This document shows, in pieces, positions 16,231 through 64,000 of a stretch of DNA of 64,000 nucleotides (positions are counted from its first letter, which is position 1; each line of letters starts with the position of its first letter). The stretch covers positions 186,001 through 250,000 of the forward strand of contig NW_026851624.1 in assembly GCF_026571515.1 (NCBI RefSeq), written 5' to 3'. The position numbers and the translations under genes were made by a program. The stretch comes from Ruditapes philippinarum. Taxonomy: Eukaryota. The notes below the pieces were generated by a model, which did no database searches, was not told where the DNA came from, and saw nothing but the letters and a program-made list of their open reading frames with translations.

Positions 16231-17644
16231 AACACTTTGAGTATCATCTTTATGAGCACGTTAAACATACTTCCATACGTATTTATATTCGTTACAGTCT
16301 TCTTTTGCAGCTACACGTATCCAGTAAATGTTGAGTAAAATCTCTTTAAATGGTATAAAGCAATATCTTATGTCATATTTTCATAACTTTATCAACAATA
16401 AGATTATATTGGTTCAATTATCTTAAGGTTCTTGCTGTAAAGTATTGTAACATAGAATTCCTCTTGACGTGTTTAACACACATGTATATTGTACGTTCAC
16501 ATAATAAAATGTTTCGGAACCAAATATTATTCAAGTAGGGTTTTATTCGCCGTGCATGACAGCTATTCGCTTTTTATGCAAAGGCAATTTACTACCAGTT
16601 TTATTTTATAGACAAACATTTGGGAAGCATTCTTTTATTTCAAAATAAGCAATACTTTATGCAGCGGATATAATGCGTTATATACTTTTATGCATATGTT
16701 CATACTGTTATGTAAATTTTAAACGTGAATTTAGAGACTCATGAACAAAATATATTGTAAATATTTATAATTTCTACTTTAATGTTTGTACTCTTACATT
16801 TTGATAACTCATGTGTTCATCAAATTTTCAAAGTAGTTTTTTCAATAGCAAACTAAAAACCGAACACAAATATTTTAAGGCTACTCATGATAGTTATACG
16901 AGTAAAATTGACTTCAACTAATATACTAGCATACCTTATCAATATCATATATAATTTAATCTTAACTCTAGAATATTTTCATTTGCAACCACTACATTTA
17001 TCTACGTTAAAATTAATGAAATAAATATAACCAAAACGTACTTTCCCTAAGCAACCGTCAAAGTACTTTAACAAAATGTCAAGTATGGCACAGAAACCTT
17101 GAGAAACTTGTTAAAACCTTAATTGCTTCGAAAGTGCCCAATGGCTAAATTCATAAAATGAGAACTTCTCGATCAACACACGGTTGCCGGTGATCTGTTA
17201 ATGACTAAAGATATAATGTAAGGTAGAATTCAATTGCAACAGAAGCGTTCCTGGCCCTATTTTTTGTAATTGGAATAGTGTATGGGAGCATTCTCCAAAT
17301 TTTATTTTATTCTGTCTCGCACGACAGTCGTCAGTGATTTTTTTGTTCATATTTTCTTACGGCATTATTTTCAGTTTTTTGTTCGTTTGTTTTTCTTGAA
17401 GTTAAATTAACTTTATTGTCAGTGCTTGTAAGATGTTTTGTTTACTATTTTCTTAATTCAACTATTCTTCTTTATCTATTGATCCAAGTCTGATCATTGT
17501 TGTTGAAAGGATTAGAACATTATACTTGTGCAAGTAAAGTAAAACAGGCCATATTGTTCACAAATTTGATAGCAAGCGTACTGTTAATTACAATATGATT
17601 GCTATCGATTGCTGAAGTTTATCTCTGTACATAATACTGTTGTA

Positions 17645-17930
17645 CTCGTTGTTTTGTTTTTTCTTTGTTTTTGTTTTTGTTGTTGTTGTTGTTGTTGCAC
17701 CAACATAGTAGAAGTGAAGTGATATGGTGATCTTCAAGTTTTTTTTTGCGGGGGAGACATCATAATCCTTTACGTGCATTGTTTCAAGCAAGAACGAGCA
17801 CTTGAGTAGAAACAGCTTGAGAGCTACCTCATGCGAAGGAATCTTAAGTCCCAGGCGGCATATGAACCCACGGCGGTAAGGGACACGTTTGTCTGAAGTC
17901 AACGACCATAACTACTCGGTCACGGGCGCC
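17645..17930 (-). mobile_element. Degenerate tRNA-derived Meta-type SINE with (CAA)n-like tail
   Basis: Head GGCGCCCGTGACCGAGTAGTT...GGGTTCA; body CATGAGGTAGCT...TTCTACTCAAGTGCTCGTTCTTGCTTGAAACAATGCACG. Family assignment is from memory of bivalve Meta-SINEs. Confidence 0.75.
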
Positions 17931-18064
17931 TTATCTAACAATTATAGCTTTGCATTTACATTTTCATAATAGTAATAATCACTATATGATATTTTAGCAA
18001 CAAATAATGTGTGTAATGCAAATACATGTAGCATAAATTTACACATATTCTCTTTATTTTTCAG

Positions 18065-18102
18065 ATGACTAGTTTGGATTAATGGTTACGATCTCAACAG
18101 CT
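18065..18102 (+). other. Candidate 38-nt micro-exon containing ATG (18082), encoding MVTISTA, phase-0 donor
   Basis: Long polypyrimidine tract plus CAG acceptor and GTAAGT donor. Both sites and the 38-nt length are kept in the paralogue at 28072. Confidence 0.6.
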
Positions 18103-18831
18103 GTAAGTTTATTATTGTATTAGGTGTCTGTTGTTTTTTTTGTGTTGACTTTTTTGTGGATTTTTAAATTATAATAATTTCGCATTTTTCACTGACAGCA
18201 GTTTTTATTAACTTTAAGGCTTGTATTTCAAGGTTTGAATATACGAAGACAAAGCGTAAAAGCACCAAAATATGTACTTAACTGGTACACGTTAATGTGT
18301 TTTTAAATTATTGTTTAAAAAACCGCAAACGTTGACTTATGAATTCAGACCAAAGTCAATGGTGAAAATTGGTAAAATATTCTACTGGTTAAGGTTTGTT
18401 ATTCAGTTTCAGCTCAACAGTACCGATACAAAATAAAACACTGCTTTATCTTTAACGAAAACGTTTCATACACATTCATTCCGGCAGAAAACAAGAGACA
18501 TTTTTACATCAAAATAGCAGGAATTTAGGTAAATACGAAAAAAGTATTTTCTGTTATTTGTCAAAATCATTCATTATACTTGTAATGGTAAACATAGCAA
18601 AGAACTTTGATAACGTTACCTTGACAAAATATTCTGTATACCATCATAATCGCATTTTATCCTACACAGCCTATCGGGTTATTTGTTTGACACAACCAAT
18701 GGCTTCTTTATGATAATAGTTTTCTATGCTTATTTACACAAACATAACACAATAGTTCAAAACAGATATGACACTTTACTGAAATTATAGAAATCTTCTA
18801 TATGAAAGTGTTTGCTGTTAAGATAGAATGA

Positions 18832-19180
18832 AATATCACATTGTATTATTATCAAAAAGATAGTTACAGTTTATGGCCTGAACTATCACCTTGTATTATT
18901 ACGAAACACATAGTTACAGATTATGGCCTAAAATGTCACCTTGTATTATTACGAAAAACAAAGTTGCAGTTTATGGCCTAAAATATCACCTTGTATTATT
19001 ACGAAAAACATAGTTATCGTTTATGGCCTAAAATATTACCTTTTGTTATTACAAAACATACTTAGTTACAATTTATGGCCTAAAATAACCCCTTGTATTA
19101 TTACGAAAAACATAGTTACAGTTTATGGCCTGAAATATCACCTTGTAATATTACGAAAAACATAGTTACACATTATGGCC
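18832..19180 (+). repeat. 49-bp minisatellite, ~7 copies
   Basis: Unit AAATATCACCTTGTATTATTACGAAAAACATAGTTACAGTTTATGGCCT. Confidence 0.95.
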
Positions 19181-19586
19181 ATATAAAACGTTCGTTTACG
19201 CGTGCATTGAAAGCAACACAATCCCAGGCGTTTTGGCAGGTAATGTCCATACAATGTGGTGGTTAATGTTCTCAATCAGTTTTTGAGAATAATAGATAGG
19301 GTTAAATTAGAGTAAAATTCTCATCAAAAGATATAGTTTTATGCGTTACAAGTTCACATATCAAGCTTATACATGTATGTCTATAATACATTTGTCATAC
19401 GATAATTGTTTTCTGAAAGTTTTGTTAAAAAAACAATACGGAATCGCAAATGCGCTTTTGTGTGCTTTATATTGATGACGATTAATTGTTCATTTTGATT
19501 TGCTCGCAAGTTAAAACTAAATGTTCACTTTGAAACAACAAATTTAAATGCTCTTGAATAGAAATGTTTTTTTTTTCCTTTTTCAG

Positions 19587-19658
19587 AATATCGTCTTTCC
19601 ACCCACTCCTTTTAGTATAAATGCAACACCTGAATGGTTTTTGTATTTTGTGTTTTAA
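19587..19658 (+). CDS. Candidate second exon of a micropeptide (NIVFPPTPFSINATPEWFLYFVF*)
   Basis: Very strong polypyrimidine/CAG acceptor, in frame with the phase-0 micro-exon. The paralogue keeps frame and stop. Confidence 0.3.
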   Translation, partial: NIVFPPTPFSINATPEWFLYFVF

Positions 19659-21664
19659 TGTGTGGCGTAGTTATTTGCATAAAATTCTGTAAAAGAACTC
19701 GCCTTTCTAATTGACTTTGAATTAAAGCCATTGCACTTTGTCACGAACCAAGAATATTTTAAGGGCATGCGCATGTCTGTGAGTTCATTAAAAAATGAAA
19801 ATGTGTACGAAATTATATAATCAGAATAGAGAAAAGCTACGTCTTGTCTTAAACGAAATGGTCTTCATAAAGAACAAAAAGTATAACAAGGGTTCGAGAA
19901 ACTTAGTCTGAGTAAGTGCCTTCATTGCCTTTAACCTGATCAACCACTTGATTACTATTAACTTGCGCAATATTACATTTTGTAATACATAATGCACTTC
20001 GCACGAAAAATTTGTATTTTAGCTTGTCCTTTCTGGAAATCTTGTTTCACGCAAAGTTTCTTTGAGTACCCTTCAGCAAATTCACCGTCCTCTCAATATC
20101 ACTTGACGAATTATTTCCAATATTTGTCTTGAATAATAATCAGACAATTATCTGAACTATGTTCATCTGTAAGTATTCTGAGACCTTGAAGTCTGAATAT
20201 TTCTCTTACTTGAAAAAAAAATACCCAATTGAATTTGTAAAGCAGTATAACCCTACATAATTGAAAAATAATATAGATGGCAGACAAGATATGCAAGAAA
20301 TAGTATGTTTTCCGTGAAAAGAGATCTTGTTTTTCTTCTTTTCTAAATATTCTCTCTAGTGCATTGCACGATACAGAAATTACACGGATTTCATTTGATT
20401 CATTTTAATAATTGGAATCTTATATTCGCAGCAGTGTCGGTAATGTGGTGTAAACATATGGTTTATAAGAACGGTCTTGATTTTATTGGTCTAAGTGTGT
20501 TTTTGTTTTATTTTTAGACATGCAATAATATCCAAATGAAGAAATTGAAAACTGCCGACGATATTATTTTTTGTAATTTATATGACTGCCTTTTCAACGG
20601 AAAAGCAAATACAAAATATCATCACACAAACATTTATTTTGATTTTATTTCAACTTCATACTCCCACATTTTGTATGTTTTAATTTCCCAAAAATATTAT
20701 ACTTATCATAGTTAAGGTTTGTTCTAAAAACCGCGAGACTTTAATATCTGATTACTTGCTTTTCGATTATGCACATACTCAAAATATTTTTTCTTAAGCA
20801 TTAAAATAGAAATTACTAAATGTTCGATTGCCGACACATTTGTTTGTTGTTTTTAATATCTTTAATTAGTTTTCATCACTTAAATGGCGATTTCTTCAAG
20901 CCATGATTAAAAATTACTAATTGTTCATTTTCCGATGCAACTATAACAAATATTTTGTGTCTCTTTTTTACAGGACTATTTTTTTCTGTATAAAGGTATT
21001 CGTTACTTGAATGATGGTTTCGAAAATACCTCTTTTGTCGCTATAACTGACGCTTTCAAGTTTATATAAAACAACCACATAAATAACTGAATTGTTCATT
21101 AAAATAAAAATAATAAATTATTTAAACTTGACTTTCCTACTCAATGGATTCGTGTTTTCACATTTACCCTGGATGTAAATGTGTATGTTTATCTTTTTCT
21201 ATGATATGATTTGCAACTGTCTTTCATGAAATGTCTTTATATGAAGCAGGCGTTTTAACGCATCAAGCCTACAATATATGTTTTTAAATAAGACTCATAA
21301 TAATGAAATTCAAACTAATTAGGAAACATTTCATATTGAGCAAACAAGTTCTCATAATAATATGTCATATATCAACATATTAGACTATATATCCGTACAA
21401 TTGTTAACTGAGTAGTACATCCTAGACGTTTATCCAACAGTTTGTTTTCTATTAGTCTCCCCTGACCTCATCATAGGATTATTCTACATACCTAAAATGT
21501 GAAACAAACTGGAGATATTCCATTGATAAGCTCGACGTTTTGTCTAGCTTGACAGAAACATTTAAGCTCATTGGCAGATTACCTGTTATATGAGGAAATC
21601 GAGAACCGGGCAGACAAATTTAACATCAGTGATACAATTTAGTTCATTAACAGTAAGTTCTGAC

Positions 21665-21709
21665 GTACGCGTATCAGGAACCTCAGGTACGCGTATCAGG
21701 AACCTCAGA
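21665..21709 (+). repeat. 22-bp perfect tandem duplication
   Basis: GTACGCGTATCAGGAACCTCAG x2. Confidence 0.9.
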
Positions 21710-22984
21710 GTAACATATTTATGTTCAATATAATTATACACATGTCTTGTTGAATAAATGCACCAATTAATAAACTATTACTAAAAGTAACGATAAATAA
21801 AACCAGACATAGTTAGATCTGCTTTTTGATACATTTCAGTAGAAAATGTTGGTACTTTTGTTAAATAAAACTACTCAACGACAAATTATTTCTTTATACA
21901 AATCTGGAAAATAAAATTCATTGGTTCTGACATTTTTTTTAAACAAAAGCAATATTTATGGAAAAAAATAAAAATGATTATACATATCATTGAATGTAAT
22001 TATTTGTTGCGTTAAATTTGTGCATTTATCGTCAATTTTAAATCAATGATTTTCTGAAATATAACCTCTAATTAGGCTTTATTAATTCAACAATTAACAT
22101 TATGTGTCTTGTTATAACAAATGAGCGAGTAAGTTAATATGAGAATAATCTCCTAAATGCTGCAACTTTGGCTTATCCTATCATTGAGGCATAAAACAAT
22201 CGAATTCTTTCGAGTTTTAAAAACATTCTATTATAGATTAAATCATATTTACACATTTTCATCATCCCACCAATAAACCAATATCTCATGAGATTCGTCT
22301 TAATCAGCTCGCTATGTCTTTGTATAGGTCATGAACACTTATGTAATATACATATATAAATTGTTAACATCCTGAAATACCGGAAAAATATTGATTATAA
22401 TTAACAAGGCGTTATATATATATAATTTTCATTTTATCAGTCATTACATCGAATACGCCCCCACCTCACGAATATTGTTTGCTACTGTTTCAAACAAGTG
22501 ATGGCCTAATATATCAAACACAGTATAATCTTTTACCTTTCCAATTGTTTATGTGTTTTGATGGATAGTACAATATGGATAAACAATGTATGTTTTTCTA
22601 TATCTAATTAATGAAAGTGTATGTCTGCTTATGTGTGAACTTTTAACTCTTTCTAACGCTGAACATGATATTGTTTTCGATAAAATCATTTTTCTTATGA
22701 TTTTATGAACCTTTACTTTTTCTCTGTTTCCATTGTTCAAGAAGTCATCGTCTTAATTAGCTAATTAGTCTGATCGTAGTAAAAGGCAAAACCATTCAAG
22801 AAATATAATATTTTAGAATGATTTTACAATCAACTTTATAAACGGATATTGCTTAAGGTAAGATATGAAAACTTTACATTAACATACATTATCCAGTCTT
22901 TTTTTAATTTTCTTTTTCATTTTGCATTTTGCTAATTATGCTGTGATAAGCAATGAAATGTTGTCTTAAACCATACACACGCAG

Positions 22985-23003
22985 GTGTGTGTGTGTGTGT
23001 GTG
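22985..23003 (+). repeat. (GT)n microsatellite
   Basis: About 9 GT units. The paralogue at 13164 has only GTGT. Confidence 0.9.
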
Positions 23004-23059
23004 ATCTTGCGAAGGTTAACTTATACCTGTTTACCTTGACCCTCAACCTATTGAACTTA

Positions 23060-23328
23060 AAAAGTTCACCTTGTGGTTGAGGGGTTGTCTCTAAAGGTTG
23101 AGGCATCAGAATTGCAGCCACCGTTTATCCCTGCGTGACCGTAAATGGCGACTAAATGGGTTTTACCCGAGTGTCTTCAGCCGGTGAGTTGGTTTTACCC
23201 CTGGTGTTGCTGTAAGTTTTTAACATCCGCGGCTAGCCAAAATCATCATTCCTGATTTGGTGCCAATCGACCTTAATTTTTTTCATACGCCGGAAAACAT
23301 TATAAACAAACAAAAACACAAACAAACA
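23060..23328 (+). mobile_element. Degenerate SINE (CCCTGCGTGACCGTAAATGGCGACTAAATGGG body, (AAAC)n tail); shorter paralogue at ~13180-13336
   Basis: GC-richer insert. The 3' part CCAAAATCATC.TT.CTG.TT.GG.GCCA matches fragments at 37133-37205 and 46100-46197. Confidence 0.65.
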
Positions 23329-24191
23329 TCTGCCATCAGTAAAGAGCTAGACGAGCCTGCACAACCACGGAGTCTTAAAAATATCTTTACATTCCGCTGT
23401 TTAATGCTTGTATCTTTTATTTAAATCCGCTTCATATTAAATTCTAAATTAAAACAGGTAACATCAATGACAACAATCTTAGCAAAAATAATGGTTCATA
23501 AGCTATGAGAGATTAAGAGAGTGTATGTATGCTTTTGTTATTTGTTGTTTATTCCTTTACTTATTGATGGAATGGGATAATTTCTGTATCAGGTTCTACA
23601 ACGTTATTTTTTCTGTTGTTTTTTGTTGTTGTTGTTGTTTTTTTCTACTCGTATTTGGAACGTGAAAACGGATATGCGAATGATTCAAATAAAACTGATG
23701 CGGCAACTGTAGATAGTTTTTCTTTCATCTCAACATTAAAGTAATAGCGACACGAAACTGGATCATTAAATATAGTTTAACAAATTATCTGTAATGTATA
23801 TTCGGAAGAGGCGGTACTTTAATTTCAATTTCTTTCATCATTTGTATGTCATGAGTTTTTTTTCTTGTTTGTATCCAGAATCAAATATATATGACGTCAT
23901 TCCAAGTATAGAACATAGATAACCGTAATAATTAGACTATTAGGGTAACTGTATCGGAATAAACACAACGCACTTTTTCTCCAGGGAATACAGGAAATAT
24001 ACGATGTAACTCTACATTTTGTATATATTTTCTTTATTATAACTTCTTATCTTCTTCAATATGCGAATTTATAGAATAATTAAGCATGCTCTCTTATAAA
24101 TTGGATATAGATTTGACTTCCAGATAAAGTTTGTTTTTATTTTTTTTTTAAAGTAAGTAGCACATAAATGTGTTGAATTACGTAACTACTA

Positions 24192-24465
24192 CATTGCTTA
24201 GTACTGATTGGTTCCAGGTACGGATCCGAGAGTGTATCAATAAGCGTATAGCTTCCAACACGACCGAAACTAAAATAAATTAGTATACATGAACTGCATT
24301 TGTCTCCGAATAGTTACAATCCCCTGTTACGGACGGACAAGCCGCTGTGTTACTGAGCAGGACATTTTACGCTCATTGCTCAGCAATTGTCGGTTCAAAG
24401 ACCGGATTCGGGAGTTTGTCTATAAGCTTATAGCTTTCTACACAATCAAACTGAAATAAATTCTG
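24192..24465 (+). mobile_element. Paralogous pair of truncated SINE copies in unit 1b
   Basis: Duplicate of 14200-14473. Confidence 0.85.
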
Positions 24466-24520
24466 ATAAACTGAACAGTAAAATCCATTCAAACGAATAC
24501 TTAATTCAATAATTATGACA

Positions 24521-24600
24521 AAATAGAAAAATGCAGAATCCCTAAAGAAAGCCCAACACGGCAAAATTGTAAATGTTGCAGGCTCGGTTTGATTGAGCCT
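24521..24600 (+). mobile_element. 80-bp terminal fragment of the hairpin-rich repeat
   Basis: Absent at paralogous position 14530; near-identical to the reverse complement of 57698-57777. Confidence 0.85.
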
Positions 24601-27600
24601 AGTATGTTCGTCTCCTTTGCTTGTGTATAATAGAGAGTGTTTTTTCCATCAAACATAAGCTTTACTTTTAAAAACTATCAGTACCGATAAAAAAGTACTG
24701 CTTTAATGTTAATCATTCGATTTAAAGAACATTAATTTTTTTATTCTTGGACATGTAAATATAAAAAAATGAATATCAGAACTTAAGACTGAGCTATCAG
24801 GGCATGCTTACTTACGACATAATTAAAACAGGGATTTAAGGAGCATGTTTTTGACATTGATTAATCCGTACTGTCGAGCTCTAAGAACAAAATTGATAAT
24901 GGCAAATTCTACAATTATATTTCATGTTCTTTAAAACCCCAGTGCACCAATGTTTTGCAAAAGACATTTTTCACTTTTAATATTTCAAATCACTTTATCT
25001 TAAATTCTGTTGAATTCTTGCAGAACGTTTAACTTTCTAGAAAAGTTGTTGCATGGTTTTTATCACAATTCAGTTCTGCTTTTTATCGACAGGAATACAC
25101 ATACATACGTCTTAGATTTTAAGTGGTTTTGTGTGTTCTAAAATGAAATAGAATGAATCAATGAACCAGTTCACTAGAGAATGTTTTACTCTGACAGTTA
25201 TGTCCCGTATGATTGCTAAAGAGAATATCAATGTCAAATTGTTCGACAGGCAATCAGATCATCCTACAAAACATTCACATAATAATATCTCTGGAAAATA
25301 TACCGTTGAAGGCGTTTACGAGAATGCTTCGAGTACGATAAGACATCTTTATTAAACTGAAAAGTGACAGAATGTAACTTTATCATCTGGGAAATGAATA
25401 TTGTACATGTTCTGTCAGTTGCATTACAAGCAAAAGAATGCTTCCAAAATGCTTGTATGGCTATTTCTAATCGAAATAATATATGCTGTGAGCTAAAAGC
25501 AACGATATTCTTCAATCGCACATAATGTTTACAATGACAATATGTCTCGTCACATCTTTTTATGTCCCTTTTTTGGTAGGAAAAGAAATCCAAGCCAATT
25601 ACAAGAATAATTAAAAGCTGTTTTATTGAAAGCAAAATGGTAAAACTTCTACATTTTGCAATATGTGAGTTTAGTGAAACGTGATTTATCACTTTATGTT
25701 GTAAATGGCATTTTGTTGATAAATATGGTATGGTTATAAGGAATAGCAAGCATTTACGCTTGATTAACACATTTAGTCACTATCCGTCACGTAGCCTAAA
25801 CTAATGTCAAATATGTTTTGAAATCTATTGACCTTTTGGTACCAAAAGCTGTAAATAGCCTCTTTGGTGTTATAATATGACAGGGACAAATCGGCTTAGA
25901 GAAGGAAATTGAATGCTTTTGTTCGCGACAAAACTGTCTGAAAGCTTCCTTCATTTGAATGGTACAGCGGATAATTTCATTCGACAGACAATCATTTGTG
26001 TTTAGCCAAGATAGACTCAAAGTGACTTAACGTTATGAAATTATCCTATGGGAGGTAAAATCCATTATGTCCCATCACCCTCGTTGATTCTATTTGCAGC
26101 GATAAGCTAATAACCGTTTCTGAGTTTATTATGGAACATACGAATATTTTGTAAGGACCATTTTCTGGAAAAGTGTAAAAGATTATTCAAACAGTTTCGT
26201 CTTTGAAATGTCGTTGAATTTTAACAAATAATTATGGCTGATATTGTAAGATAGAACGTGTATGCATTTAAAAACTTTTTATTTTCCTCCATCGCTTTTT
26301 ACGAAACAATTGCAATTACTGAAATATTAGTTTTCATTTCACCCTTTTTTAACACTTTGAGTATCATCTTTATTAGCACGTGAAACATACTTTCATACGT
26401 ATTAATACTCGTTATAGTCTTCATTTGCAGCATAAGCGTATCTAGTAAATGTTGAGTAAAATCTCTTTAAATGGTTTAAAGCAATATCTTATGTCATATT
26501 TCATAACTCTATCAACAATAAGATTATATTGGGTTCAATTATCTTAAGGTTCTTGCTGTAAAGTATTGTAAAATAGAATTCCTCTATTGTTTAACACACA
26601 TGTATATTGTACGTACACATAATAAAATGTTTCGGAACCAAATATTATTCAAGTAGGGTTTTATTCGCCGTGCATGGCAGCTATTGGCTTTTTATGCAAA
26701 GGCAATTTACTCATAGACAATCATTTGGGAAGCATTCTTTTATTTCAAAACAAGCAATACTTTATGCAGCAGATATAATGCTTTATATACTTTAATGCAT
26801 ATGTTCATACTGTTATGTAAATTTTAAACGTGACTTTAGAGACTCATGAACAAAATATATTGTAAATATTTATAATTTCTACTTTAATGTTTTACTCTTA
26901 CATTTTGATAACGCATTTGTATATCAAATTTTCAAGGTAGTTTTTCAATAGTAAACTAAAAACCGAACACAAATATTTTAAGGCTACCCATGATAGTTAT
27001 ACGAGTAAAAATGACTTCAGCTAATATACTAGCATACCTCATCAATATCATATATAATTTAATCTTAACTCTAGAATATTTTTTGCAACCACTACATGTA
27101 TCTACGTTAAAATTAATCAAATAAATATAACAAAAACGTACTTTCCCTAAGCAATCGTCAAAGTGCTTTTACAAAATGTCAAGAATAGCACAGAATCCTT
27201 GAGAAACATGTTAAAACCTTAATTGATTGGAAAGTGCCCAATGGCTAAATTCATAAAATAAGAACTTCTTGATCAACACGGTCGCCGATGATCTGTTAAT
27301 GACTCAAGATATAATGTAAGGTAGAATTCAATTGCAACAGAAACGCTTCAGGCCCTGTTTTTTAATTGGAAAAATGTATGGAAGCATTCTCGAAATCTTA
27401 TTTAATTCTGTCTCGCATGACAGTCGTCAGTGATATTTTTTGCCAATTTTCTTTAGGCATTGATTTCAGTTTTTTTTCCTGTAGTTAACTATTTTTTTCA
27501 GTGCTTGTAAGATGTTTTGTTTACTATTCTCGTAATTCAACTATTCTCCTTCAACTATTGATCCAAGTCTGATCATTGTTGATGGAAGGAATAGAACATT

Positions 27601-27684
27601 ATACTTATGCAAGTAAAATAAATCAGGCCATATATTTCACAAATTTGATAGCAAGTGTACTGTGAAACAGGCAATATGATATAC

Positions 27685-27937
27685 TTGTTTTTTTTTTTTG
27701 TTGTTATTTTTTTTCACCAACATAATAGAAGTGAAGTGATATGGCGATTTGTTAGCTTTACTTGTAGAAGGAGACATTATTATCCTTTACGTGCATTGTT
27801 TCATGCAAGAACTAGCACCTGAATAGAGAGAGACAGCTTGAGAGCTACTTCAAGCAAAGGAGTTTAAAGTCCCACCCACGGCGGTGAGGGACAAGTATGT
27901 CTAAAGTAATCGAATTAACCACCCGATCACGGGCCCC
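27685..27937 (-). mobile_element. Paralogous degenerate Meta-type SINE
   Basis: Same position in unit 1b as 17645-17930. Confidence 0.72.
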
Positions 27938-28071
27938 TCATTAAACAATTATACCTTTGCATTAACATCCTCTTAATAATGATAACTATTTGATATTCTA
28001 GCAAAAGATGATTTGTGTAATTGCAAAGAGCATATATTTACACATTCACACATATAATTTTTATTTTTCAG

Positions 28072-28109
28072 ATGACTAGCTTGGATTAATGGTTACAGTC
28101 TCAACAGCA
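28072..28109 (+). other. Candidate 38-nt micro-exon (paralogue), MVTVSTA, phase-0 donor
   Basis: TTTTTATTTTTCAG acceptor and GTAAGT donor. 4 substitutions versus 18065-18102. Confidence 0.6.
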
Positions 28110-28884
28110 GTAAGTAAATTATTGTTTTGGATGACTGTTTTTGTGCGTTTTTTATTATAATAATTTCACAGTTTTCCCCAAGACTCCATATACAGCAGTA
28201 TTTATTAACTTTAAGGCTTGTATTTAAGGTTTAAATATACAAAGACATAGCGCAAAAGTACCAAAATATGTACTTAACTGGTGGTATACCTTAATGTGTT
28301 TTTAAATAGTTGTTTAAAAAACCCGAAAAGGTTTACTAATGAATTAGAACGTAGAAAATTAAAGATGTATTGACATTTTCATCTTGTTCAAGTTTGTATA
28401 AATTCTGTTTCAGCTTAATATTGACGATACAAAATAAAACACTGCTTTATTTTTAACGAAAATGCTGAATACACATTTAATCCGGCAGAAAACAAGACAC
28501 TTTATTATGAATAAACGCAGCACATACATAAAATTAACAGTACTTTATTATCGTATTTGTCTTGTCTTTTCTGTTATTTGTAAAAAGCATTCATTATGCT
28601 TGTTAATGGTAAATTTAGCAAAGAACTTTAAAAAAGTTACCCTGACAAAATACTGGTATTCTGTATACTTTTATCCTACACAGGGTATCGCGTAATCTGT
28701 TTGTTTATTAGTTAACACAAACAGTGGCTTCTTTCAGGATAATAGTATTCTATGCTTATTTACAAGTATAACACAATAGTTCAATACATGTACGACGGTT
28801 TACTGAAATTATATAAATCTTCTATATAAAAGTTTTTGCTGCTAAGATAGAATGAAATGTCACCTTGTATTATTACATGTACGC

Positions 28885-29215
28885 AAATTGTTTCAAAGTC
28901 TTTTAAACAATATTGTGTATTCTGTAACTATTATAAATCAAGTGACACACAGTTAAAAGCAAACTTGTGCAGACAAAACTGTCAAATAAAGCATTTGATC
29001 TTTTGAAATAAACATTGATTTTCTTTATTAAATAACATAAAATAACACTTAACAAATTGAATATCACACCCGCCGATTTCAAAATTGATTATAGAAAGTT
29101 AATATTCCATAAACGAATTTCTGAAACGTGACTTTTATACGAGATTTGTACGTAGATAGAAATCTTGAAATTGATTAGCGAAAATATTAAATATCACAAA
29201 CTTTAAGATTGAATT
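28885..29215 (-). repeat. Inverted ~330-bp copy of 40463-40790 / 31512-31850
   Basis: Reverse complement matches, e.g. TTGTGCAGACAAAACTGTCAAATAAAGCATTTGATCTTTTGAAATAAACATTGATTT. Absent from unit 1a. Confidence 0.92.
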
Positions 29216-29332
29216 AATAATACGTTCGTTTATGCATGCAATGAAAGCAACACAAACCCAGTCGTTGGAACAGGTAATGTCCACACAATGCGGTGAGTTA
29301 TAATGTTCTCAATCAATTTGAAAATAATAGAT

Positions 29333-29677
29333 CACAGGTGGTCGTCCAGTCTTGGTGCCCATATAAAAAAATGAAGTTAAAAAAAAAGAAAACAAAAACA
29401 ACAAAAAAAACACCAAAACAACTTTTGTAATAATTTTTTTTTCCCTATATACCCTTACTACCAAAAGGTCAACTAGTCGCCGTAACGCTATGGAGCTTTA
29501 CTAGGACACGCTGTGGAACAACCACAATGTCCAGTTCTGTAATAATACAAGCTATTTTGCAACTCTTTACACATCATGCATTTAGAAAATTGTTAACATT
29601 CTTCTTCTTCTACCTTACATACAATCTTGAATAACTTACATTTTTTATATGGCACCAAGACTGGACGAGCACCTGTG
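29333..29677. mobile_element. MITE, P- or hAT-type, ~45-bp TIRs, 8-bp TSD
   Basis: CACAGGTGGTCGTCCAGTCTTGGTGCC... / ...GGCACCAAGACTGGACGAGCACCTGTG. TAATAGAT at 29325-29332 and 29678-29685. The paralogous site (~19290) has a single TAATAGAT. Confidence 0.95.
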
Positions 29678-29957
29678 TAATAGATAGGGTTTAAATAGAG
29701 TTTTACTCTCATCACAGATTTTTCTATGCGTCACAGATTCACATATCAAGCTAATACATGTATGTCCATAATACATTTGTTATACGATTATTTTTTCTGT
29801 AAGTTTTGTTAACAAGCAATTCCAGAATCGCAAATGCTTAAATATGGATGACAACAAATTGTTCATTTTGATTTGCTTGACAGGTAAAACTTATACCTTC
29901 ACTTCGAATCAACAAAATTTAATGCTTTTGAATAGAAATATTTTTTTCTTTTTTCAG

Positions 29958-30032
29958 AATATCGTCTTTCCACCCACTCCTTTTAGAATAAATGCAACAC
30001 CTGAATGGCTTTATTTGTATTTTGTCTTTTAA
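29958..30032 (+). CDS. Candidate second exon, paralogue (NIVFPPTPFRINATPEWLYLYFVF*)
   Basis: Same acceptor. Differs by a net 3-nt indel, a synonymous GTG/GTC change and S/R. Confidence 0.3.
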   Translation, partial: NIVFPPTPFRINATPEWLYLYFVF

Positions 30033-33009
30033 TGTGTGGTGTAGTTATTTGCATAAAATTCTGTAAAAGAAATCGCCTCTTTTAATTGACTTTGAATTGT
30101 CTGTCAGCTATTTGCAATATGTTAATAGCTGAGCTATGTTGTTGATGCACAAAAATCAATAAGGAGTTTGATCTAAGACAGTTAATATCATTGCAATTAC
30201 TTTGGTTTACATGCATTTGCTTGAATGAGGCGTTGAAATCATCTAGATTGTCAGGTAACAAATTCTGCATGATATAATTTTTGATATGACCGAATTTTGC
30301 TATTTCAGGTATTCATTTATTTCATTTAATAATAACTGTCTTACCGCTTACATTTTATTGTTATGGGATAATGATAGAAGCATTTCAAGTGAGCTTCTAT
30401 CAATGTCCTTGTAAATGTGGTTTAATTGGAGAATGGGTGTGATAACTTTCCAATTCAGATTGCAATTGTGTTGATATGATAATTATGACTTTAAGTACAT
30501 TTTCTGTATTTTCAAGTGAAATGAATCAATAGGCTCTTTCATTTATAATGTTTTATATTCTATATTGACAGGAATGCCTCGTCTGTTTCTTCGAGTGCCT
30601 ATAAACATGTACTATAAGAATCAAACAAAATACAAAGTGTTTTTAATAATGAAGTTACCAGAAACTGAATGAGCACAATTTTTTTTCAAGAGAGTGCCTT
30701 CAAATATAAATGACACAACTATTATTTCAAGCGATATGAACTTGACATAAATTGTTTCAATGATGCTAAACATAAATTTGATAATACATTTATATTTACA
30801 TTTTAGAAATGCAAAGAATGAAACTTCAGTTATAACAACGTGTTTTTATTGTGTGGACTATGCACGTAAAAAGCGTAACCGCAAATCCTGTTTGCCTTTG
30901 TGTGCCTACTCGAATAAATTCCAGACAATTATGACTTATTCAAAATGAGTTGATATAATTCATAATAATACACCACCTTTCAATATGTTGGTATATAATA
31001 ATTTAAGTAATTAGAAAATGTTGTTTAGAAGATAATGATGTCATAAAGATATAAAAGTGAACGTTATGTTGAACGTGCAACGTGCAAGTCTAAACAATTG
31101 CTGAATTTGAGATCATCTAATAAGGCAAGCAAATTATTGCGCTGAAATTCGTAAAAGGCGTAATTTCGAACGATGTAAACTAAGAAATACTAAGACTTCC
31201 AGCTAATGTATGTGTATTTAATCCATTTCTAGTAGATCCGAAAATGTATAATTATAATATTTCATTATCTAGTTCAAATAATCTTGTGTTAACTTCGACA
31301 CGAACACTAACGAAGGACACCATTTCAAAAAGTACGTGAAGAACTGGTGTTGATGCACGGGTATAAAGATTGTATGACCATGACACTGAATGTAGCCCCG
31401 TTAAATATGTGTCTTAATTATTATTGACAATAATACGCCTTCTAGAATATTAAAATGAAACTAAATGCTTCAATTATGTTCTTACAAAAGATAAACGCTT
31501 AAATATTTATTTTGAATTCATTCTTTGTGATATTTAATATTTTCGCTACTCAATTACATGTTTTCTATCTACGTACAGATCTTGTATTAAAATCACGTTT
31601 TAGAAATTCGTTTATGGAATATTAACTTTATATAATCAATTTTTAAATCGGAGGGTGTGATATTCAATCTGTTAAGTGTTATTTAATGTTATTCAATAAA
31701 GAGAATCAATGTCTATTTCAAACGATCAAATGTTTTATTTGACAGTTTTGTCTGCGCAAGTTAATTTTAAGTGTGTGTCACTTGGAGGACTTTTATTTAT
31801 AATAGTTACAGAATACACAACATCATTGTTTAAAAGACTTTCAAACAAATACATTTTCACCACGCATTGAAACAAAGTGTACAAAAGTTGAAAGTGTTCA
31901 TTAGCGTGATGGGAATGTTTATTTGTCAATATTTGGCATAATTATTTTCTTTGATAGTCTTTTGGAGTTTTTTATTTTAGTGCATTTTAAACCTTTTTTT
32001 ACATATTGTCTCAAAGAGTCACTTTACATATATAAGTGCTTGAAACTTTGGAAATTATCCGATGGTCAAGTTTGACTTGAATGTATTTTCTAACCGATGT
32101 GACTTTTCTCTAAGTTATCACAATATGTATTTATACGTCGAACATTAAAATTCGTTTCTTATTAAGCGATATATTCGAATTTTATTCTTTAAATAAGCTT
32201 ATGAGGATTTTAACAAGACTAAAAATGTCTTAGAGTACGAAATTGACTGCTTTTCCTGGCGACAAATCTGTCTGAAAAGGCTTGTTTATTCCATTTGACA
32301 AACTTCCATTGTATGTTTTAGTAACGGTAGACTTCTAATGTCGCAACATTATTCAATTACCGTTTTGGAGGCGAAATCCATTCCGTTCTATTATTTCTCT
32401 TTATCATATTTGCAGTAGTAACCATTGTAGTAATATCTAAGTAGACTTAGACATTCGTATACATTAAGACCTTCTAGGAGACGTAAATCCCATTTAATGT
32501 ATTAACATCATTTATGAAAGACAGAAGTGTTTATCTGTTATACAGCACTTTGATTTATACGAATAGTATATAATATTAGATAATTGTTAAGGATCAAATT
32601 ATGTATTTCTTGCCGCCTTTCTGTCAACAATCGGATATTTGTTTCTACATTTGTGCAGCATTTGCACTTCCATGAATAACGGAAAATACATCAGTCCCAC
32701 AAATTAGAATATAATTATCATTACCATTGTTATCAGCACGCCAATTTGTTATTGTGAAACAAAATTTATTTTGCAATTTCAACGATAAAGTACATCTTGA
32801 ATTGATATTGTTTTATATGGATTTATATCCATATTGTTTAACGTACTTGAATTGCAGTTCTGTTTTGAGTTTCCCAAATCTGATTTTCTCGAAGCTCTGA
32901 AACATTAATTTATGAGCTTAACTTCTCATATACTTGCCATATCTGTTCTTAATCAATCCAAACTAAAGAAGCCGTCACCTATAAATAAGATACCCATAAA
33001 TACGAAAGT

Positions 33010-33182
33010 AGGGGTCCGTAAAATGTCTTAAATGACTACATTTTATCCGCTTGGCGCCTGGCATAGTGGTATGAGTTGGGAGGTACATGGTATGCAAGCA
33101 AAGGTGTCTCACAAGTCAGAAACGGCTGGCCCATTCAGTAGGGGTGACACTATAATAAACAATACCTTTACCTTTACCTTTT
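33010..33182 (+). mobile_element. SINE-like remnant with (ACCTTT)n tail; paralogue at ~42200-42372
   Basis: GC-richer body CCGCTTGGCGCCTGGCATAG...GGCTGGCCC ending AATAAAC and ACCTTT repeats. Confidence 0.55.
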
Positions 33183-45135: not shown

Positions 45136-45407
45136 TCAGTTTTCCGATTAATCATTTTAAAACAGTTTTTATTGCACTGTCAGCGTTAAATCGCAATTAC
45201 AATAGATCGTTTCTTGGCTTTAAATGTTATGTGTAAACCAAAGTTTTGTCTATAATTGACAATTTCCCAATAATGGAATTCACCCTCTTCGAAGTTTTGG
45301 CAATATCTCACTTCTCATAAAATACCGACAATCAATACTGTAGCTCATATAGCGGAATTAATTTGGTCGTATTTTCAATATAATATAGCTACTTCATGGT
45401 AATGAGA
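45136..45407 (+). promoter_or_regulatory. Candidate promoter/first exon, paralogue: ATG GTA ATG AGA | gtaagt
   Basis: As for 36560-36828. Confidence 0.45.
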
Positions 45408-46099: not shown

Positions 46100-46197
46100 A
46101 CACCCGAGGTTACCAAAATCATCTTTACTGTTTCGGCGCCATATACCTTTATTGTGTTGGTGCGCCGTAAAACCAACCAACCAAACAAACAAACACG
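46100..46197 (+). mobile_element. SINE 3' fragment; paralogue at ~37133-37225
   Basis: GGCGCCATATACCTTTATTGTGTTGGTGCGCCGTAAAACC followed by an (AACC/AAAC)n tail. Confidence 0.7.
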
Positions 46198-47326: not shown

Positions 47327-47483
47327 AGTAAAAGAGAAAAAATAGCTCTTGGGAATTCGGTCTAATGTGAGCCTCCTATTACAGGCAACTTTGTACAAGC
47401 CAAGAAACTGTTACAAATTCTTGATATTCATTTTATAGAACAGAAATGTTACACATCATTAGACTTTCTTAGCCCCTTGAGAG
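47327..47483 (+). other. Paralogous 157-nt exon candidate, non-coding or pseudogenised
   Basis: Same splice sites, but TTA>TAA closes the frame that is open in 38489-38645. The other two frames are also closed. Confidence 0.4.
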
Positions 47484-48160
47484 GTACGCAGGGTATTTGC
47501 ATATAATTAGACGAATACGGTCAAAACGCCAAGAATGGGGAAGATTGTTCAAATATTATTTACAGTCCAAAGGAATGTCTCGATGGACTGTATGGCTGAG
47601 ATGGGTTTTTAGTTTTGGTGAAGGATATATTCGCACGAAAAGCTATCCAAAACATTAAACATGTGAATATTGAATATTACGTTAATGGTGTAAATAGCAA
47701 TTTTAAATCTTTTAAACTTTAGACCTTGAAGTATATCATGAAATGATTCAACTCCTTCATTATAAATAATCATTACTTTCAGCAAAGAAATGTTCATGTT
47801 ATGACATTAAGTTAAGAACCCATGATACTCTTTTCAAGATCAGAAAAACGCTGGTATATCAGTTCGTTTATAGGGTGAACATCAAAGCATCAAAGAACGT
47901 TTCCTTAAATGGAAACAGCAAAATCATATAACGATCAATCTTTCAAAATCTTAAATGTACATTGTCTGCACGAAAAGAAATAGCATATACCAATAGGCCA
48001 TATACCTAGTGACTTATATATATGTGCATTACAATATAAAAGAGCTATTTTAGAACTATTGAATATAGATATAATCCCATAACGCATTTTAACGTAAATT
48101 AAATATATTATGTGATTTTCAAATGAACACCGATAACCCCAACTTAAGACATGTACAAAA

Positions 48161-48465
48161 TCAGTGCAGAACCACGGTTTCCTTCTTTTCCATTTATTCA
48201 TGAATAATAAGTATTCTTGTTGTATTCCCATCTTTAAATCATTATTTTCTAGACCCTTCTTTGGCGTTGTACCATTTAATATATTACACGAACGCTGGTG
48301 TGCGCGTCTACAATTTCCCCGGTAATGGCAATGTTCTCTATAAAGTTTTGGCAATCTACCACATCTAAGCAAATCCCGCTAATCAATACAGGAATTTTAT
48401 CCTAAATTAGTCGAATAAATCTGCCCAAATCTTTCTTAACACTAAGGCTAGAATATATGAGAAAG
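48161..48465 (+). promoter_or_regulatory. Diverged candidate promoter/first exon: ATG AGA AAG | gtaata
   Basis: ACAATTTCCC..TAATGG...AAGTTTTGGCAAT...AATCAATAC is homologous to 36680-36760. ATG at 48457, donor at 48466. The 5' boundary is a guess from TCAGTG. Confidence 0.35.
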
Positions 48466-48857
48466 GTAATAGTTACTAGAGAGGGAAAGTAGGCATTATT
48501 TAATGATTAATCACATTTATAGGACACGAGGATAATCATTTATATGCCCTTTCAAATCTCTGCTTTTAAGGCCTTCCTTACTTTAACTATGACCTTGTGC
48601 GTTTATATTTATAAGGTTTGTGCAAGAACAGTATTTATGCTTTCAACGGTATTGACGTTAAGAAAACATTCTGGTTGTGCCCGTGTTAATACACTGAACT
48701 TCAAGTCCATATATTGATATATTCATGTATATGATAATTAAAAGTGCTTTATTAATCAAATATTAAATGAAAAGTTGAACCAAAATAGTTTATATATACC
48801 ATATTGATAATAAAAAAATCAATGTGCCTTGCGCCATCTTATGTACATAATCAAACT

Positions 48858-54190: not shown

Positions 54191-55211
54191 TCACAGTGAA
54201 CTCTGGAAACTATTAAGAACCGTCAAATGAATGATTTATGTTTGTTTCAATCATACTATAGCCACAATATCTGTAATTGTAACTTCCATGGTTTGTTCAA
54301 GTCGCATGACTTGTTTTAAAACTACTCAGTGATTCTGCCGGCGTCTAAATTTCGTTAAACATATATAGGTATATTTAAACTTCAAACCCAAAATATATAG
54401 AATATTTACAGAAATCCATGCTGGAACTTTTACAAATGTCATATCAGCGTGATTCGAGTACAAAAGATAGTTTTGATATTTTTGTCATTAATTTGCCTGA
54501 GGTAACAAATATAGCTATAATTCGTTAAATGTGAAAGTCCTGAGACGAACTCTCGTTTACAAACATTTAAAGAGTTTCTGATTTTAGTTACAAACAGATT
54601 AGTGAAGCAATTATGAAATTTTGTTAACTACCTAAACATGCTTTAATTTAATGCTTTTCTTTATTAAAATCATTGGAGAAATTGAATATTAAAACAAGAT
54701 GTTATTGTGTTTTCATATCACATCCTTCAAAATTTATTTGTAATGTTTCAATAGCCTGAACTTATGTGCGTGTCGAATAATTTAATGATATTTTTTTATC
54801 ATTGAAAGGTAGTATTTGTGATACTTTTAGACTTTACTCATTGTTTGCTCCACTCTTGTTTTATCTATTTAACTTTTTAATATGCATCGGAAATAATTGT
54901 ATAGATATGTAATTATTCTTTGTGAATTTTTGGCGATGTCTCACGTCTTGTCTGATAATATACTGCCGATCAATAATGGAACTTTAGCTCGCATAATTGG
55001 AAAGAATGAATTTTATATAGTCAGCACTAGAGTTTATATATACACGTATTAGAGCAATAAAGCTGTACTTTATGATTTACAGGATAAATATATTATTGCA
55101 CACTCCTTCCTTATCTTTATAAATAGAATATAACCTTCATTTGTATACAATTTACAATACGATAATTGTCGTTTTTCAAGTGTTATTTTTATATTCCTTT
55201 TCTCTTTTCAG

Positions 55212-55249
55212 ATGAAATTGCGGGATTAAACACAAGAATGAAAACACAT
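55212..55249 (+). other. Candidate 38-nt micro-exon (diverged paralogue), ends MKTH, phase-0 donor
   Basis: TTCCTTTCTCTTTTCAG acceptor and GTAAGT donor. Same length, same ATGA start and GGATTAA at the same offset as the other two. Confidence 0.55.
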
Positions 55250-62049: not shown

Positions 62050-63850
62050 TTTGTTTTTTAAAAAGGCCTGAATCTTGTGAATTTTGGTTAAATGATAGAT
62101 TTCAAAATTGTCTACATTCAATTTGTTGTTTTTGTTAAACCCTTATCATTTACTCATTGTTCACTTGACTCTTGTGTACTTGTTTTATATTCAACGAAAG
62201 TTATTGTACAGTCTACAATTTTCATAGAAATGCAATTATTATTGGTGAATATTTGGCAATGTCTCACGGCTTTTCAGATAATATACTGTAGATCAATAAT
62301 GGAACTTAAGCTCGTATAATTGGAAAAAAATGAATTTTATATAGTCAGCACTGGAGCATAATAGAAAGTTAATAGATACAAGAGAAATAAGGCTGTACTG
62401 TATGATTAATTGCGTACATAAGACACCACACTTATAATACACTGTCCTTTCTAATCCTTAACAGCGTTTGTGTATATAGTTCGCTATATTATATTGCTTT
62501 TTAATTTATTCATACTCCCCTACACATTTCATTTAATTTGTTTCGACTTGACAAGCATCCATGAAATGAACAGTTAAATATTCGGATATTTTTTTATTCG
62601 ACATAAACATAAATTGGGTTCCTTTTCATTATTAGATCAAAACGAAACTATACATTATGATATTATTTAGTTGAACAAATAAAACCATTTCAGGATGAAA
62701 CATTTCATAACTGCTATAATAAAAAGTTCATCAGATGAAAGATTTGTTTCCCTTTCAAAGACTGAGGTAGTGTTTTTGCACTTAATTAGTATTTATACAA
62801 CAGTACTATTGCGTAGTCAATAAATATAAACGCATTAATATATTTATATAATTGGCATATTAATGTTCATTTACAGACAAATATCCTTTGAATTAGGTAC
62901 TTCTTATTATTGAAGGTTACAACAAACAAAACTTGTTGACAACATCAGAAGAACGCTTCTATGATAAACATGTAGCAAGGTTAAAACAAATTGCGTAAAC
63001 ATCTGAGCAATAAAACCAACCCCATTTCTCTTGGAAAATCTTAAAGCCGGATGTTTTGCACCAATGTTGACTATTTCAATGATTCATTACCGTTTAATAA
63101 GCTCCTATGTTTAAAGGCTTTGTTTACATATCTGTTGCAGTAGGAAATCAGTTGTTTCACCCTTACTTCTTTAGAAAGTGCTGCTTTCGTCAAGCATTCA
63201 AAATTGCATATTAAAATTAACACAGATACAGTTTCGTTATGTAATTTGAATGAACTTAATAACAAAATGTCTAAAATATGGAAAAAACGTCACAAGGACA
63301 GGCAGCGTTAAATGAACCATATAATTAAAAACTACTTCATTCAGTGAAATGCAAGATACAAGTTGAAAACCTTACGGTATTTAAAATAATGAAACATGTA
63401 AAATATCGATTGGTACCTATCAAGTATTACATGTCTTATAAGATTGTCATGATGTGTTCTTTTCGTAAGTTATGGTTTTTACTTGTATGTGTTTTTATTA
63501 ATTTATTGTTTTCTGACGTATATATTGAATTTATCTAATGTTTACAGTCCATTTCTGTAATGAGGCATTGATGAGATTTATAATTGTTTCTATCAATTCC
63601 TTCGTTAAGAAATCAATTCGAAGGAAACGGCGGTACGAGTAACAAAACAACTGAGATTTTTTTACCTACACATCCCTGAAACAATTTATAACCTGTACGG
63701 AAACCCTTAAAATACCATCAAAATAATTATGCAAAACTACTTTGAATACTCTTGATTTATAGAGTGCGTATATCATACTGTCCCTGTAACAATTCTGATA
63801 TAGCTGAATTATAAACGGAAGGGTTGATACTACTTTCCAATTTCCATAAA
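62050..63850 (+). repeat. Older segmental duplication, unit 3b (internally shorter copy of 3a)
   Basis: Same blocks as unit 3a. Lacks the equivalents of ~55200-56700 and 57459-57779. Confidence 0.88.
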
Positions 63851-64000
63851 AAATGCATATATAAATGCAGGCTTTACAATACGTATTTCAGCAGACAATA
63901 AGTATTTAAAGCTTCTGATATTAATTGATATTCGTAATTGTTTGCATTACTCTTAATTTCCTCAACATGACCAGTCTTTACTAATATTGCTTTTGTCAGG

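What the first reader, a model, noticed from the sequence alone, without database searches (positions are those of the whole stretch)
17310..64000. Array of duplicated promoter/5'-exon cassettes, each ending ATG + few codons + phase-0 donor, with no gene body in the window
Seen: six paralogous units each carry a + strand donor preceded in frame by a nearby ATG. These are MVTISTA (18082-18102), MVTVSTA (28089-28109), MR (36823-36828), MVMR (45396-45407), MRK (48457-48465) and MKTH (55238-55249). All are phase 0 and five have GTAAGT. Each lies at or shortly after a related conserved island: TCGCACGACA followed by Inr-like TCAGT at 17317 and 45114, or the TTTGGC.AT...ATCAATA core at 36.7, 45.3, 48.3, 54.9 and 62.3 kb. 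The seventh copy (62.3 kb) has lost ATG and GT (ATAATAGAAAGTTAATAG versus ATATGAGAAAGGTAATAG). Known: vertebrate clustered protocadherins, UGT1A and chelicerate sDscam use tandem promoter/first-exon arrays spliced to constant exons, but their variable exons encode whole domains. Inference: here whole ~9-kb regulatory units with tiny N-termini may have been multiplied upstream of one shared coding region, diversifying expression rather than protein. Caveat: the copies are not independent, and a phase match has a 1-in-3 chance for each.
Basis: partly seen in the sequence, partly recalled or inferred. Interest (0 to 1): 0.85.

Follow-up and report, generated by a model that had tools for sequence, protein, structure and literature searches.

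The report
Duplicated microexon units before clam receptor
Non-coding DNA upstream of a Manila clam muscarinic acetylcholine receptor gene has been copied in tandem many times, carrying conserved blocks and a roughly 38-base exon with intact splice signals, but the ATG-plus-donor "N-termini" occur at chance frequency and cannot add residues to the receptor.

Summary
The window is Ruditapes philippinarum contig C111:186001-250000. It is AT-rich and has no coding ORF.

Type 1 is a conserved core of about 190 nt. It has nine same-strand copies, and only three have a usable donor. Type 2 is not a first exon. It is an internal microexon of 37-45 nt in six copies, whose acceptor TTTTCAG|A and donor GTAAGT never vary while the exon body and flanks have decayed to 41-61% identity.

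GTAAGT and in-frame ATGs are at background frequency. The next + strand gene is a single-coding-exon muscarinic receptor 88 kb beyond the window. Its acceptor is followed by stops in all three frames, so no N-terminal extension is possible. At least four RefSeq accessions share the one protein.

Best reading: amplified regulatory and 5'-UTR-exon units of the receptor gene, as in human CHRM2. The scan also noted a micropeptide candidate in unit A.

The parts
11272..19722 (+). Tandem unit A, the older copy of the roughly 10-kb duplication.
   Evidence: Self-BLAST blocks against 19723-30098 at 81-88% identity. The identity profile is 90-100% over 14.9-17.2 kb and about 70-80% over 17.3-19.7 kb.
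19723..30098 (+). Tandem unit A'.
30346..39215 (+). Tandem unit B (period about 8.9 kb).
   Evidence: Collinear blocks against 39262-48076 at 73-84% identity.
39262..48076 (+). Tandem unit B'.
18065..18102 (+).
28072..28109 (+). 38-nt internal microexon of unit A' (MVTVSTA).
55212..55249 (+). 38-nt internal microexon of unit D (MKTH), starting 324 nt after the start of its core.
   Evidence: Paralogues outside the window lie at L010:92-128, L011:8624-8668 and L012:4391-4428.
36678..36860 (+). Core copy (type 1) of unit B, with a GTAAGT donor at 36829 (MR).
   Evidence: nhmmer E 3e-35; alignment A1.
45257..45440 (+). Core copy of unit B', with a GTAAGT donor at 45408 (MVMR).
   Evidence: It is 96% identical to the B core.
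48306..48495 (+). Core copy C, with a GTAATA donor at 48466 (MRK).
54888..55060 (+). Core copy D. The homologous donor site is deleted, and a microexon follows.
62211..62400 (+). Core copy E. The donor has decayed, and the microexon was lost in a deletion of about 600 nt relative to the 73.7-kb unit.
34584..34772 (+). Conserved non-coding block X. It has about 10 + strand copies, found only on this contig, and one lies 0.4-2.5 kb before most cores. Other window copies are at 43136-43297 and 61840-61909.
15680..15970 (+). Conserved non-coding block Z. It is 100% identical to 25848-26138, with older copies at 60381-60468 and four places downstream of the window.
37273..37370 (+). Conserved block Y. 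Other copies are at 46257-46340, 57154-57233 and two places downstream of the window.
   Evidence: Its copy number in the rest of the genome was not checked.
17767..17930 (.). Dispersed SINE-like repeat lying between the 17317 island and the microexon.
   Evidence: At least 40 copies on other contigs at 70-80% identity.
19587..19658 (+). Candidate downstream exon of unit A, with a strong acceptor ending at 19586. It is conserved in A' near 29.96 kb and is found only in A and A'.

Best explanation
The window lies in the long non-coding 5' region of a single-coding-exon muscarinic acetylcholine receptor gene of the Manila clam. That region has grown by repeated, nested tandem duplication of units 7-13 kb long.

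What each unit carries:
- Several conserved non-coding blocks (X, the TTTGGCAAT...GATCAATA core, Y and Z). These are most simply duplicated cis-regulatory modules.
- In six units, an internal microexon of 37-45 nt whose splice signals have been kept by selection.

Inferred, not shown: the microexons are alternative cassette exons of the receptor's 5' UTR. Transcripts from upstream start sites would splice through one or more of them and then into the acceptor 67 nt before the receptor ATG.

The ATGs in the microexons are incidental. At most they start short upstream ORFs that end over the receptor start codon. They cannot change the protein.

The three core-linked donors at 36829, 45408 and 48466 may mark extra leader exons or may be nothing.
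For: Shown:
- Organism and gene. The 711-aa ORF at L028:397-2529 is 100% identical to R. philippinarum 'muscarinic acetylcholine receptor M2-like' and matches 7tm_1 at E 3e-40.
- One locus, several accessions. Only one genomic locus encodes this protein, yet at least 4 RefSeq XP accessions carry it.
- No other gene nearby. There is no other ORF with a Pfam match between the window and this exon, or in the 50 kb upstream.
- Duplication structure. The region from ext 11 to 117 kb is a set of collinear same-strand duplications.
- Core. There are nine + strand copies between ext 36.7 and 98.2 kb, none elsewhere in the 298 kb examined, and none found on other contigs by DNA search with two of the copies.
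- Microexons. All six keep TTTTCAG|A and GTAAGT invariant. Exon bodies are 56-61% identical and flanks 41-53%.
- Rarity of the motif. It has 0.00 expected matches per window and occurs nowhere else in the 35 fetched loci.
- Position. In four units the microexon starts 324-357 nt after the core start.
- Closed frames. All three frames after the coding-exon acceptor stop.

Precedent: human CHRM2 has five untranslated exons, three or four promoters and at least 6 mRNAs for one protein (PMC2198911).
Against: - No transcript evidence of any kind was obtained, so the exons' use and partners are inferred.
- The RefSeq variants might differ elsewhere, for example in the 3' UTR or in other 5' exons.
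- The unit A microexon has a strong candidate acceptor 1.5 kb downstream inside its own unit. It might therefore belong to a separate short transcript.
- Three core lineages lack the microexon, and A/A' lack the core, so 'unit' is a loose term.
- Gene conversion could have refreshed some blocks. One stretch of A/A' is 100% identical.
Confidence: 0.5

Rival explanations
1. Each unit is an alternative promoter with its own first exon, as in protocadherin, UGT1A, BDNF or NR3C1, spliced to the shared receptor exon. The core is the promoter. The microexon would then be a hybrid exon used both as a first and as an internal exon. There is no contribution to the protein.
For: - The core is conserved across old units while most of the surrounding sequence has decayed.
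- The core-to-microexon distance is constant at 324-357 nt.
- Three cores have a donor at +151 to +160.
- Several RefSeq accessions carry one protein.
Against: - The microexons have conserved acceptors, which a pure first exon does not need.
- Six of nine cores have no usable donor at the homologous site.
- No TATA or initiator motif is held at a fixed place in alignment A1.
- The core is only one of four repeated conserved blocks.
- The 17317 island is not conserved above its surroundings.
Confidence: 0.17
2. Separate short transcripts. The exon-like pieces belong to unit-internal non-coding RNAs or micropeptide genes, for example microexon 18065-18102 joined to the exon starting at 19587. 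They would be duplicated along with the units and unrelated to the receptor mRNA.
For: - A strong acceptor ends at 19586 and is conserved in A'.
- ATTAAA or AATAAA signals lie nearby.
Against: - The second exon has no copy in units D, F, H or I, although their microexon splice sites are equally well kept.
- Microexon lengths of 37, 38 and 45 nt, and the out-of-phase ATG in the 92.6-kb copy, argue against a shared coding role.
Confidence: 0.15
3. Neutral by-product. The units are untranscribed duplicated spacer, and the splice-like and ATG motifs were simply inherited by copying.
For: - GTAAGT and ATG-plus-donor are at background frequency.
- The region duplicates readily, including stretches with no exon-like features.
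- The copies are not independent.
Against: - In five lineages the 14 splice-signal positions are invariant while the flanks are 41-53% identical.
- Blocks X, core and Z stay recognisable where the rest of the unit is not.
Confidence: 0.15
4. The tiny ORFs are real alternative N-termini fused to the downstream protein.
For: Five of the six microexons have an ATG in phase 0 with the donor.
Against: - All frames after the only acceptor before the receptor ATG are closed.
- All RefSeq accessions give the same 711-aa protein.
- The phase-0 ATG rate matches background.
Confidence: 0.02

Closest known systems
Human CHRM2 and other muscarinic or GPCR genes with an intronless coding region and several untranslated 5' exons and promoters
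   Same: - A single coding exon.
- An acceptor shortly before the ATG.
- A 5' region well over 100 kb long.
- Several mRNAs for one protein (PMC2198911).
   Different: Here the candidate 5' exons are paralogues made by tandem duplication and sit in units with repeated conserved blocks. Their use is not shown.
Clustered protocadherin and UGT1A variable-first-exon arrays
   Same: Tandem paralogous units lie on one strand upstream of shared downstream exon(s). Each unit has a conserved sequence element near its exon.
   Different: The variable exons of those arrays are large, coding first exons without an acceptor. Here the exons are about 38 nt, non-coding, and have conserved acceptors. No promoter is shown.
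Tandem exon duplication giving cassette or mutually exclusive exons (Dscam, 14-3-3, Mhc; own knowledge)
   Same: Paralogous exons in a row, each with both splice sites, created by local duplication.
   Different: - Unit spacing is 6-20 kb rather than hundreds of bases.
- The exons are non-coding and unequal in length.
- No docking or selector complementarity was found.
BDNF, NR3C1, NOS1 and CYP19 type genes with many alternative untranslated first exons (own knowledge; CYP19 in PMC8067493, listed)
   Same: Expression, not protein, is diversified through alternative non-coding leaders joined to one coding exon.
   Different: Those leaders are generally not paralogous copies of each other and are first exons with mapped promoters.

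Membership tests
Variable-first-exon array (protocadherin / UGT1A type) | Each variable exon is a first exon: it has a donor but no 3' splice acceptor. | tested here: not met
   All six type-2 exons have an invariant polypyrimidine tract plus CAG acceptor. The type-1 cores have no uniform boundary.
Variable-first-exon array (protocadherin / UGT1A type) | Variable exons encode a protein segment joined in frame to constant exons. | tested here: not met
   All three frames stop after the acceptor at L028:330. Exon lengths are 37, 38 and 45 nt.
Variable-first-exon array (protocadherin / UGT1A type) | Each exon has its own promoter, and all splice to one constant acceptor. | not testable with these tools
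GPCR gene with intronless CDS and multiple untranslated 5' exons (CHRM2 type) | A single coding exon preceded by a 5'-UTR intron. | tested here: met
   The 711-aa ORF is uninterrupted, and an acceptor lies 67 nt before the ATG. A related bivalve contig, L029, has the same arrangement.
GPCR gene with intronless CDS and multiple untranslated 5' exons (CHRM2 type) | Several transcripts encode the same protein. | tested here: inconclusive
   At least 4 RefSeq XP accessions carry the identical sequence, and the genome has one locus for it. The transcript structures were not visible.
GPCR gene with intronless CDS and multiple untranslated 5' exons (CHRM2 type) | The candidate exons are spliced into the receptor mRNA. 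| not testable with these tools
   No RNA data were reachable.
Tandemly duplicated cassette or mutually exclusive exons (Dscam type) | Paralogous neighbouring exons, each with an acceptor and a donor. | tested here: met
   Six copies.
Tandemly duplicated cassette or mutually exclusive exons (Dscam type) | Selector elements complementary to a docking site. | tested here: not met
   - Ungapped complementarity, allowing G-U pairs, of three conserved core segments against 298 kb does not exceed shuffles.
- nhmmer finds no minus-strand hit with E below 1.
- The test was limited: it was gapless and covered only 298 kb.
Rhodopsin-type muscarinic receptor (downstream gene) | A 7tm_1 domain and close full-length relatives named as muscarinic. 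| tested here: met
   PF00001 at E 3e-40. Bivalve 'muscarinic acetylcholine receptor' proteins are 49-85% identical over 92-100% of the query. Ligand specificity was not tested.
Structured small RNA cluster (miRNA / snoRNA) as the identity of the core | A conserved secondary structure or an Rfam match. | tested here: not met
   RNAalifold predicts 0 pairs on the nine cores. There are no Rfam hits and no tRNA hits.

The most novel reading that the evidence does not exclude
Each core plus microexon is a self-contained promoter-proximal module. On this reading a clam muscarinic receptor gene has multiplied its own leader and promoter six to nine times, and each leader can serve as a first or an internal exon. 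Cell-type-specific or stochastic choice among paralogous leaders would then tune one unchanged receptor. Most leaders would carry an ATG that, after splicing, opens an upstream ORF ending over the receptor start codon. This would be a protocadherin-like array that acts on expression only.
Probability: 0.1. Interest if true: 0.7.

Novelty: new variant of a known kind. Interest (0 to 1): 0.35.

Why it matters
If RNA data confirm it, this would be a clear case of 5'-UTR exons and their neighbouring conserved elements being multiplied by tandem duplication in front of an intronless neurotransmitter receptor gene. It would show how regulatory complexity can grow without touching the protein, in a mollusc where gene regulation is little studied.

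As it stands, the work has three results:
- It removes the "tiny N-termini" idea.
- It shows that the ATG and phase pattern is chance.
- It replaces six "promoter cassettes" with two defined element families that can be tested directly with junction reads.

Tried and rejected
RNA evidence
- The single metagenome scan returned only a genomic contig of a related bivalve (L029). It shows the same acceptor-before-ATG layout but has no core.

Sequence reach
Only 50 kb upstream of the window was read.

Ideas rejected
- The core as a structured RNA: no consensus pairs and no Rfam or tRNA hits.
- The core as a Dscam-like selector: no complementary docking site. An RNAduplex scan timed out.
- The core, X or Z as dispersed transposons: their copies are found on this contig only.
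- A CpG-rich block 31 kb upstream of the window as the promoter: it is a dispersed DNA transposon with terminal inverted repeats.
- Hidden coding exons: ten of the ORFs of 100 aa or more have no Pfam match.
- Homology between the 17317 and 45114 islands: it does not reproduce between the sister copies. The local-alignment test had low power, because its positive control was weak.

Other
- Literature on the clam receptor gave nothing relevant.
Only single exons were read, by reference.
Full report
Where we are. The window is G000:C111:186001-250000 of a 1.41-Gb assembly. A protein search identifies the organism as the Manila clam Ruditapes philippinarum. The window is 27-33% G+C throughout and has no credible coding ORF. 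I read 184 kb downstream and 50 kb upstream of the window. Below, 'ext' coordinates continue the window numbering downstream.

The observation. The statistics do not support a special ATG-plus-donor signal:
- GTAAGT occurs 31 times on both strands against 37 expected from shuffles.
- 5 of 21 + strand GTAAGT have an in-frame ATG within seven codons. That rate matches the 16-21% seen at loosely defined GTAA sites on either strand.
- Two of those five are duplicates of two others.
- 'Phase 0' follows from picking the in-frame ATG.
- The 10-mer shared by 17317 and 45114 is mutated in both sister copies, and its flanks do not align reproducibly.
- The 17317 island is not an identity peak between A and A'.

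Structure. Self-comparison shows nested, collinear, same-strand tandem duplications:
- A 11.3-19.7 kb and A' 19.7-30.1 kb, at 81-88% identity.
- B 30.3-39.2 kb and B' 39.3-48.1 kb, at 73-84% identity.
- Older units continue beyond the window, for example 62-70.7 against 73.6-83.8 kb and 100.1-108.7 against 108.7-117.0 kb.
- One more duplication straddles the window start.

Type 1 is a conserved core of about 190 nt that contains TTTGGCAAT, GATCAATA and AGCTCATATA.
- Profile search finds nine + strand copies at ext 36.7, 45.3, 48.3, 54.9, 62.2, 73.7, 84.6, 92.3 and 98.0 kb.
- None lies elsewhere in the 298 kb examined.
- DNA searches of the whole genome with two of the copies (36.7 and 54.9 kb) find matches only on this contig.
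- The copies form about five old lineages that are 50-60% identical to one another.
- Only the copies at 36.7, 45.3 and 48.3 kb have a usable donor at the homologous position. In the others it is mutated or deleted.
- The core has no consensus RNA structure and no Rfam match.
- No complementary 'docking' sequence was found.
- It is one of at least four repeated conserved blocks. X has about 10 copies. Z has seven copies, two of them 100% identical over 291 nt. Y has five.

Type 2 is the main new result. The MVTISTA, MVTVSTA and MKTH sites are the 3' parts of a small internal exon, not a first exon.
- A long polypyrimidine tract and CAG precede an exon of 37-45 nt that ends at GTAAGT.
- There are six copies: window 18065-18102, 28072-28109 and 55212-55249, and outside the window L010:92-128, L011:8624-8668 and L012:4391-4428.
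- Anchored alignments show TTTTCAG|A and GTAAGT invariant in all six, while few other positions are conserved.
- In the D-F and H-I pairs the flanks are 41-53% identical, the exon bodies 56-61%, and the donors 6 of 6.
- The combined motif has 0.00 expected matches per shuffled window. Across all 35 fetched loci it occurs only at these six places.
- A stricter microexon scan of 298 kb gives 8 hits on the + strand, five of them this family, and 2 hits on the - strand.
- In four units the exon begins 324-357 nt after the core start.

I read this as purifying selection on splice signals, so these are probably real exons. Their unequal lengths and the out-of-phase ATG in the 92.6-kb copy argue against a shared coding role.

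The gene. The first convincing + strand gene after the window is an uninterrupted 711-aa ORF (L028:397-2529, ext 152397-154529).
- It is 100% identical to R. philippinarum 'muscarinic acetylcholine receptor M2-like'.
- It has a 7tm_1 domain and close bivalve orthologues.
- An acceptor ends at L028:329, 67 nt before the ATG.
- A phase-0 join reads 25 codons and stops at a TGA overlapping the ATG.
- The receptor frame has an upstream TAA, and the third frame also stops (that script was off by one base, corrected).

The small ORFs therefore cannot extend the receptor. At most they would be upstream ORFs.

The same protein carries at least four RefSeq accessions, and the genome holds one locus for it. 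The simplest reading is several transcript variants that differ outside the coding region. This matches the known layout of human CHRM2, which has five untranslated exons, three or four promoters, at least six mRNAs and one protein (PMC2198911). No other Pfam-matching ORF lies between the window and the receptor.

Interpretation. My best reading (about 0.5) is that tandem duplication has multiplied regulatory blocks and a 5'-UTR cassette microexon in the receptor's 5' region.

Shown:
- The duplication structure.
- The two element families.
- The conserved splice signals.
- The closed frames after the receptor's acceptor.
- The identity of the downstream gene.

Inferred:
- That the microexons are transcribed.
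- That they join the receptor mRNA.
- What the core does.

Rivals:
- Alternative promoters with hybrid first or internal exons (0.17).
I confirmed its acceptor and conserved ORF, but its second exon is found only in A and A' (0.15).
- A neutral by-product of duplication (0.15).
- True alternative N-termini (0.02).

What could not be done. The decisive tests are the RefSeq transcript structures and junction reads at the coordinates listed under next steps.

Verdict. This is a new variant of a known kind (untranslated 5' exons of an intronless GPCR gene, here amplified in tandem). Interest is moderate and depends on RNA confirmation.

Noticed in passing
L034:7655-9331 (contig C111:153655-155331, about 31 kb upstream of the window): A CpG-rich block of about 1.7 kb that looked like a promoter island is a dispersed DNA transposon. 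It has inverted terminal repeats of about 60 nt and dozens of copies at 88-97% identity on other contigs. By eye, its internal ORF fragment resembles the N-terminus of a Harbinger-type transposase.
   Followed up: partly
window 17767-17930 and its A' counterpart near 27.9 kb: A SINE-like dispersed repeat with at least 40 copies at 70-80% identity on other contigs. It inserted before the A/A' duplication, just upstream of the microexon, where other units have the core-to-exon spacer.
   Followed up: partly
window 15680-15970 versus 25848-26138: These 291 nt are 100% identical inside a duplicate pair that is otherwise about 70-90% identical. The whole 14.9-17.2 kb stretch is 90-100% identical. 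This points to gene conversion or strong constraint on block Z.
   Followed up: partly
L032:2829-2894 (contig C111:168829-168894, + strand): A single-copy 66-nt exon-like segment, richer in G+C, with a good acceptor and a GTAAGT donor. A second such segment lies about 1 kb upstream of it. Both could be further 5' exons of the same gene.
   Followed up: partly
window 43482-43955 and 18808-19230: Minisatellites with a 31-nt period (about 15 copies) and a 50-nt period (about 8 copies) inside units B' and A. Their GTAA-containing repeats inflate counts of donor-like sites.
   Followed up: no
L028:338-370: The receptor's coding exon itself carries a 10-codon upstream ORF (ATG at 338, TAA at 367-369) in the receptor's frame, between the acceptor and the main ATG.
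   Followed up: no
ext 179987-181517 (L020-L021): ORFs of 152 and 232 aa that look like reverse-transcriptase fragments of a LINE-like element, downstream of the receptor gene.
   Followed up: no
window 19587-19658 and about 29961-30035: A strong acceptor followed by a 23/24-codon ORF, conserved between A and A' with an in-frame 3-nt indel. This is the second exon of the micropeptide candidate noted earlier on this window.
   Followed up: partly
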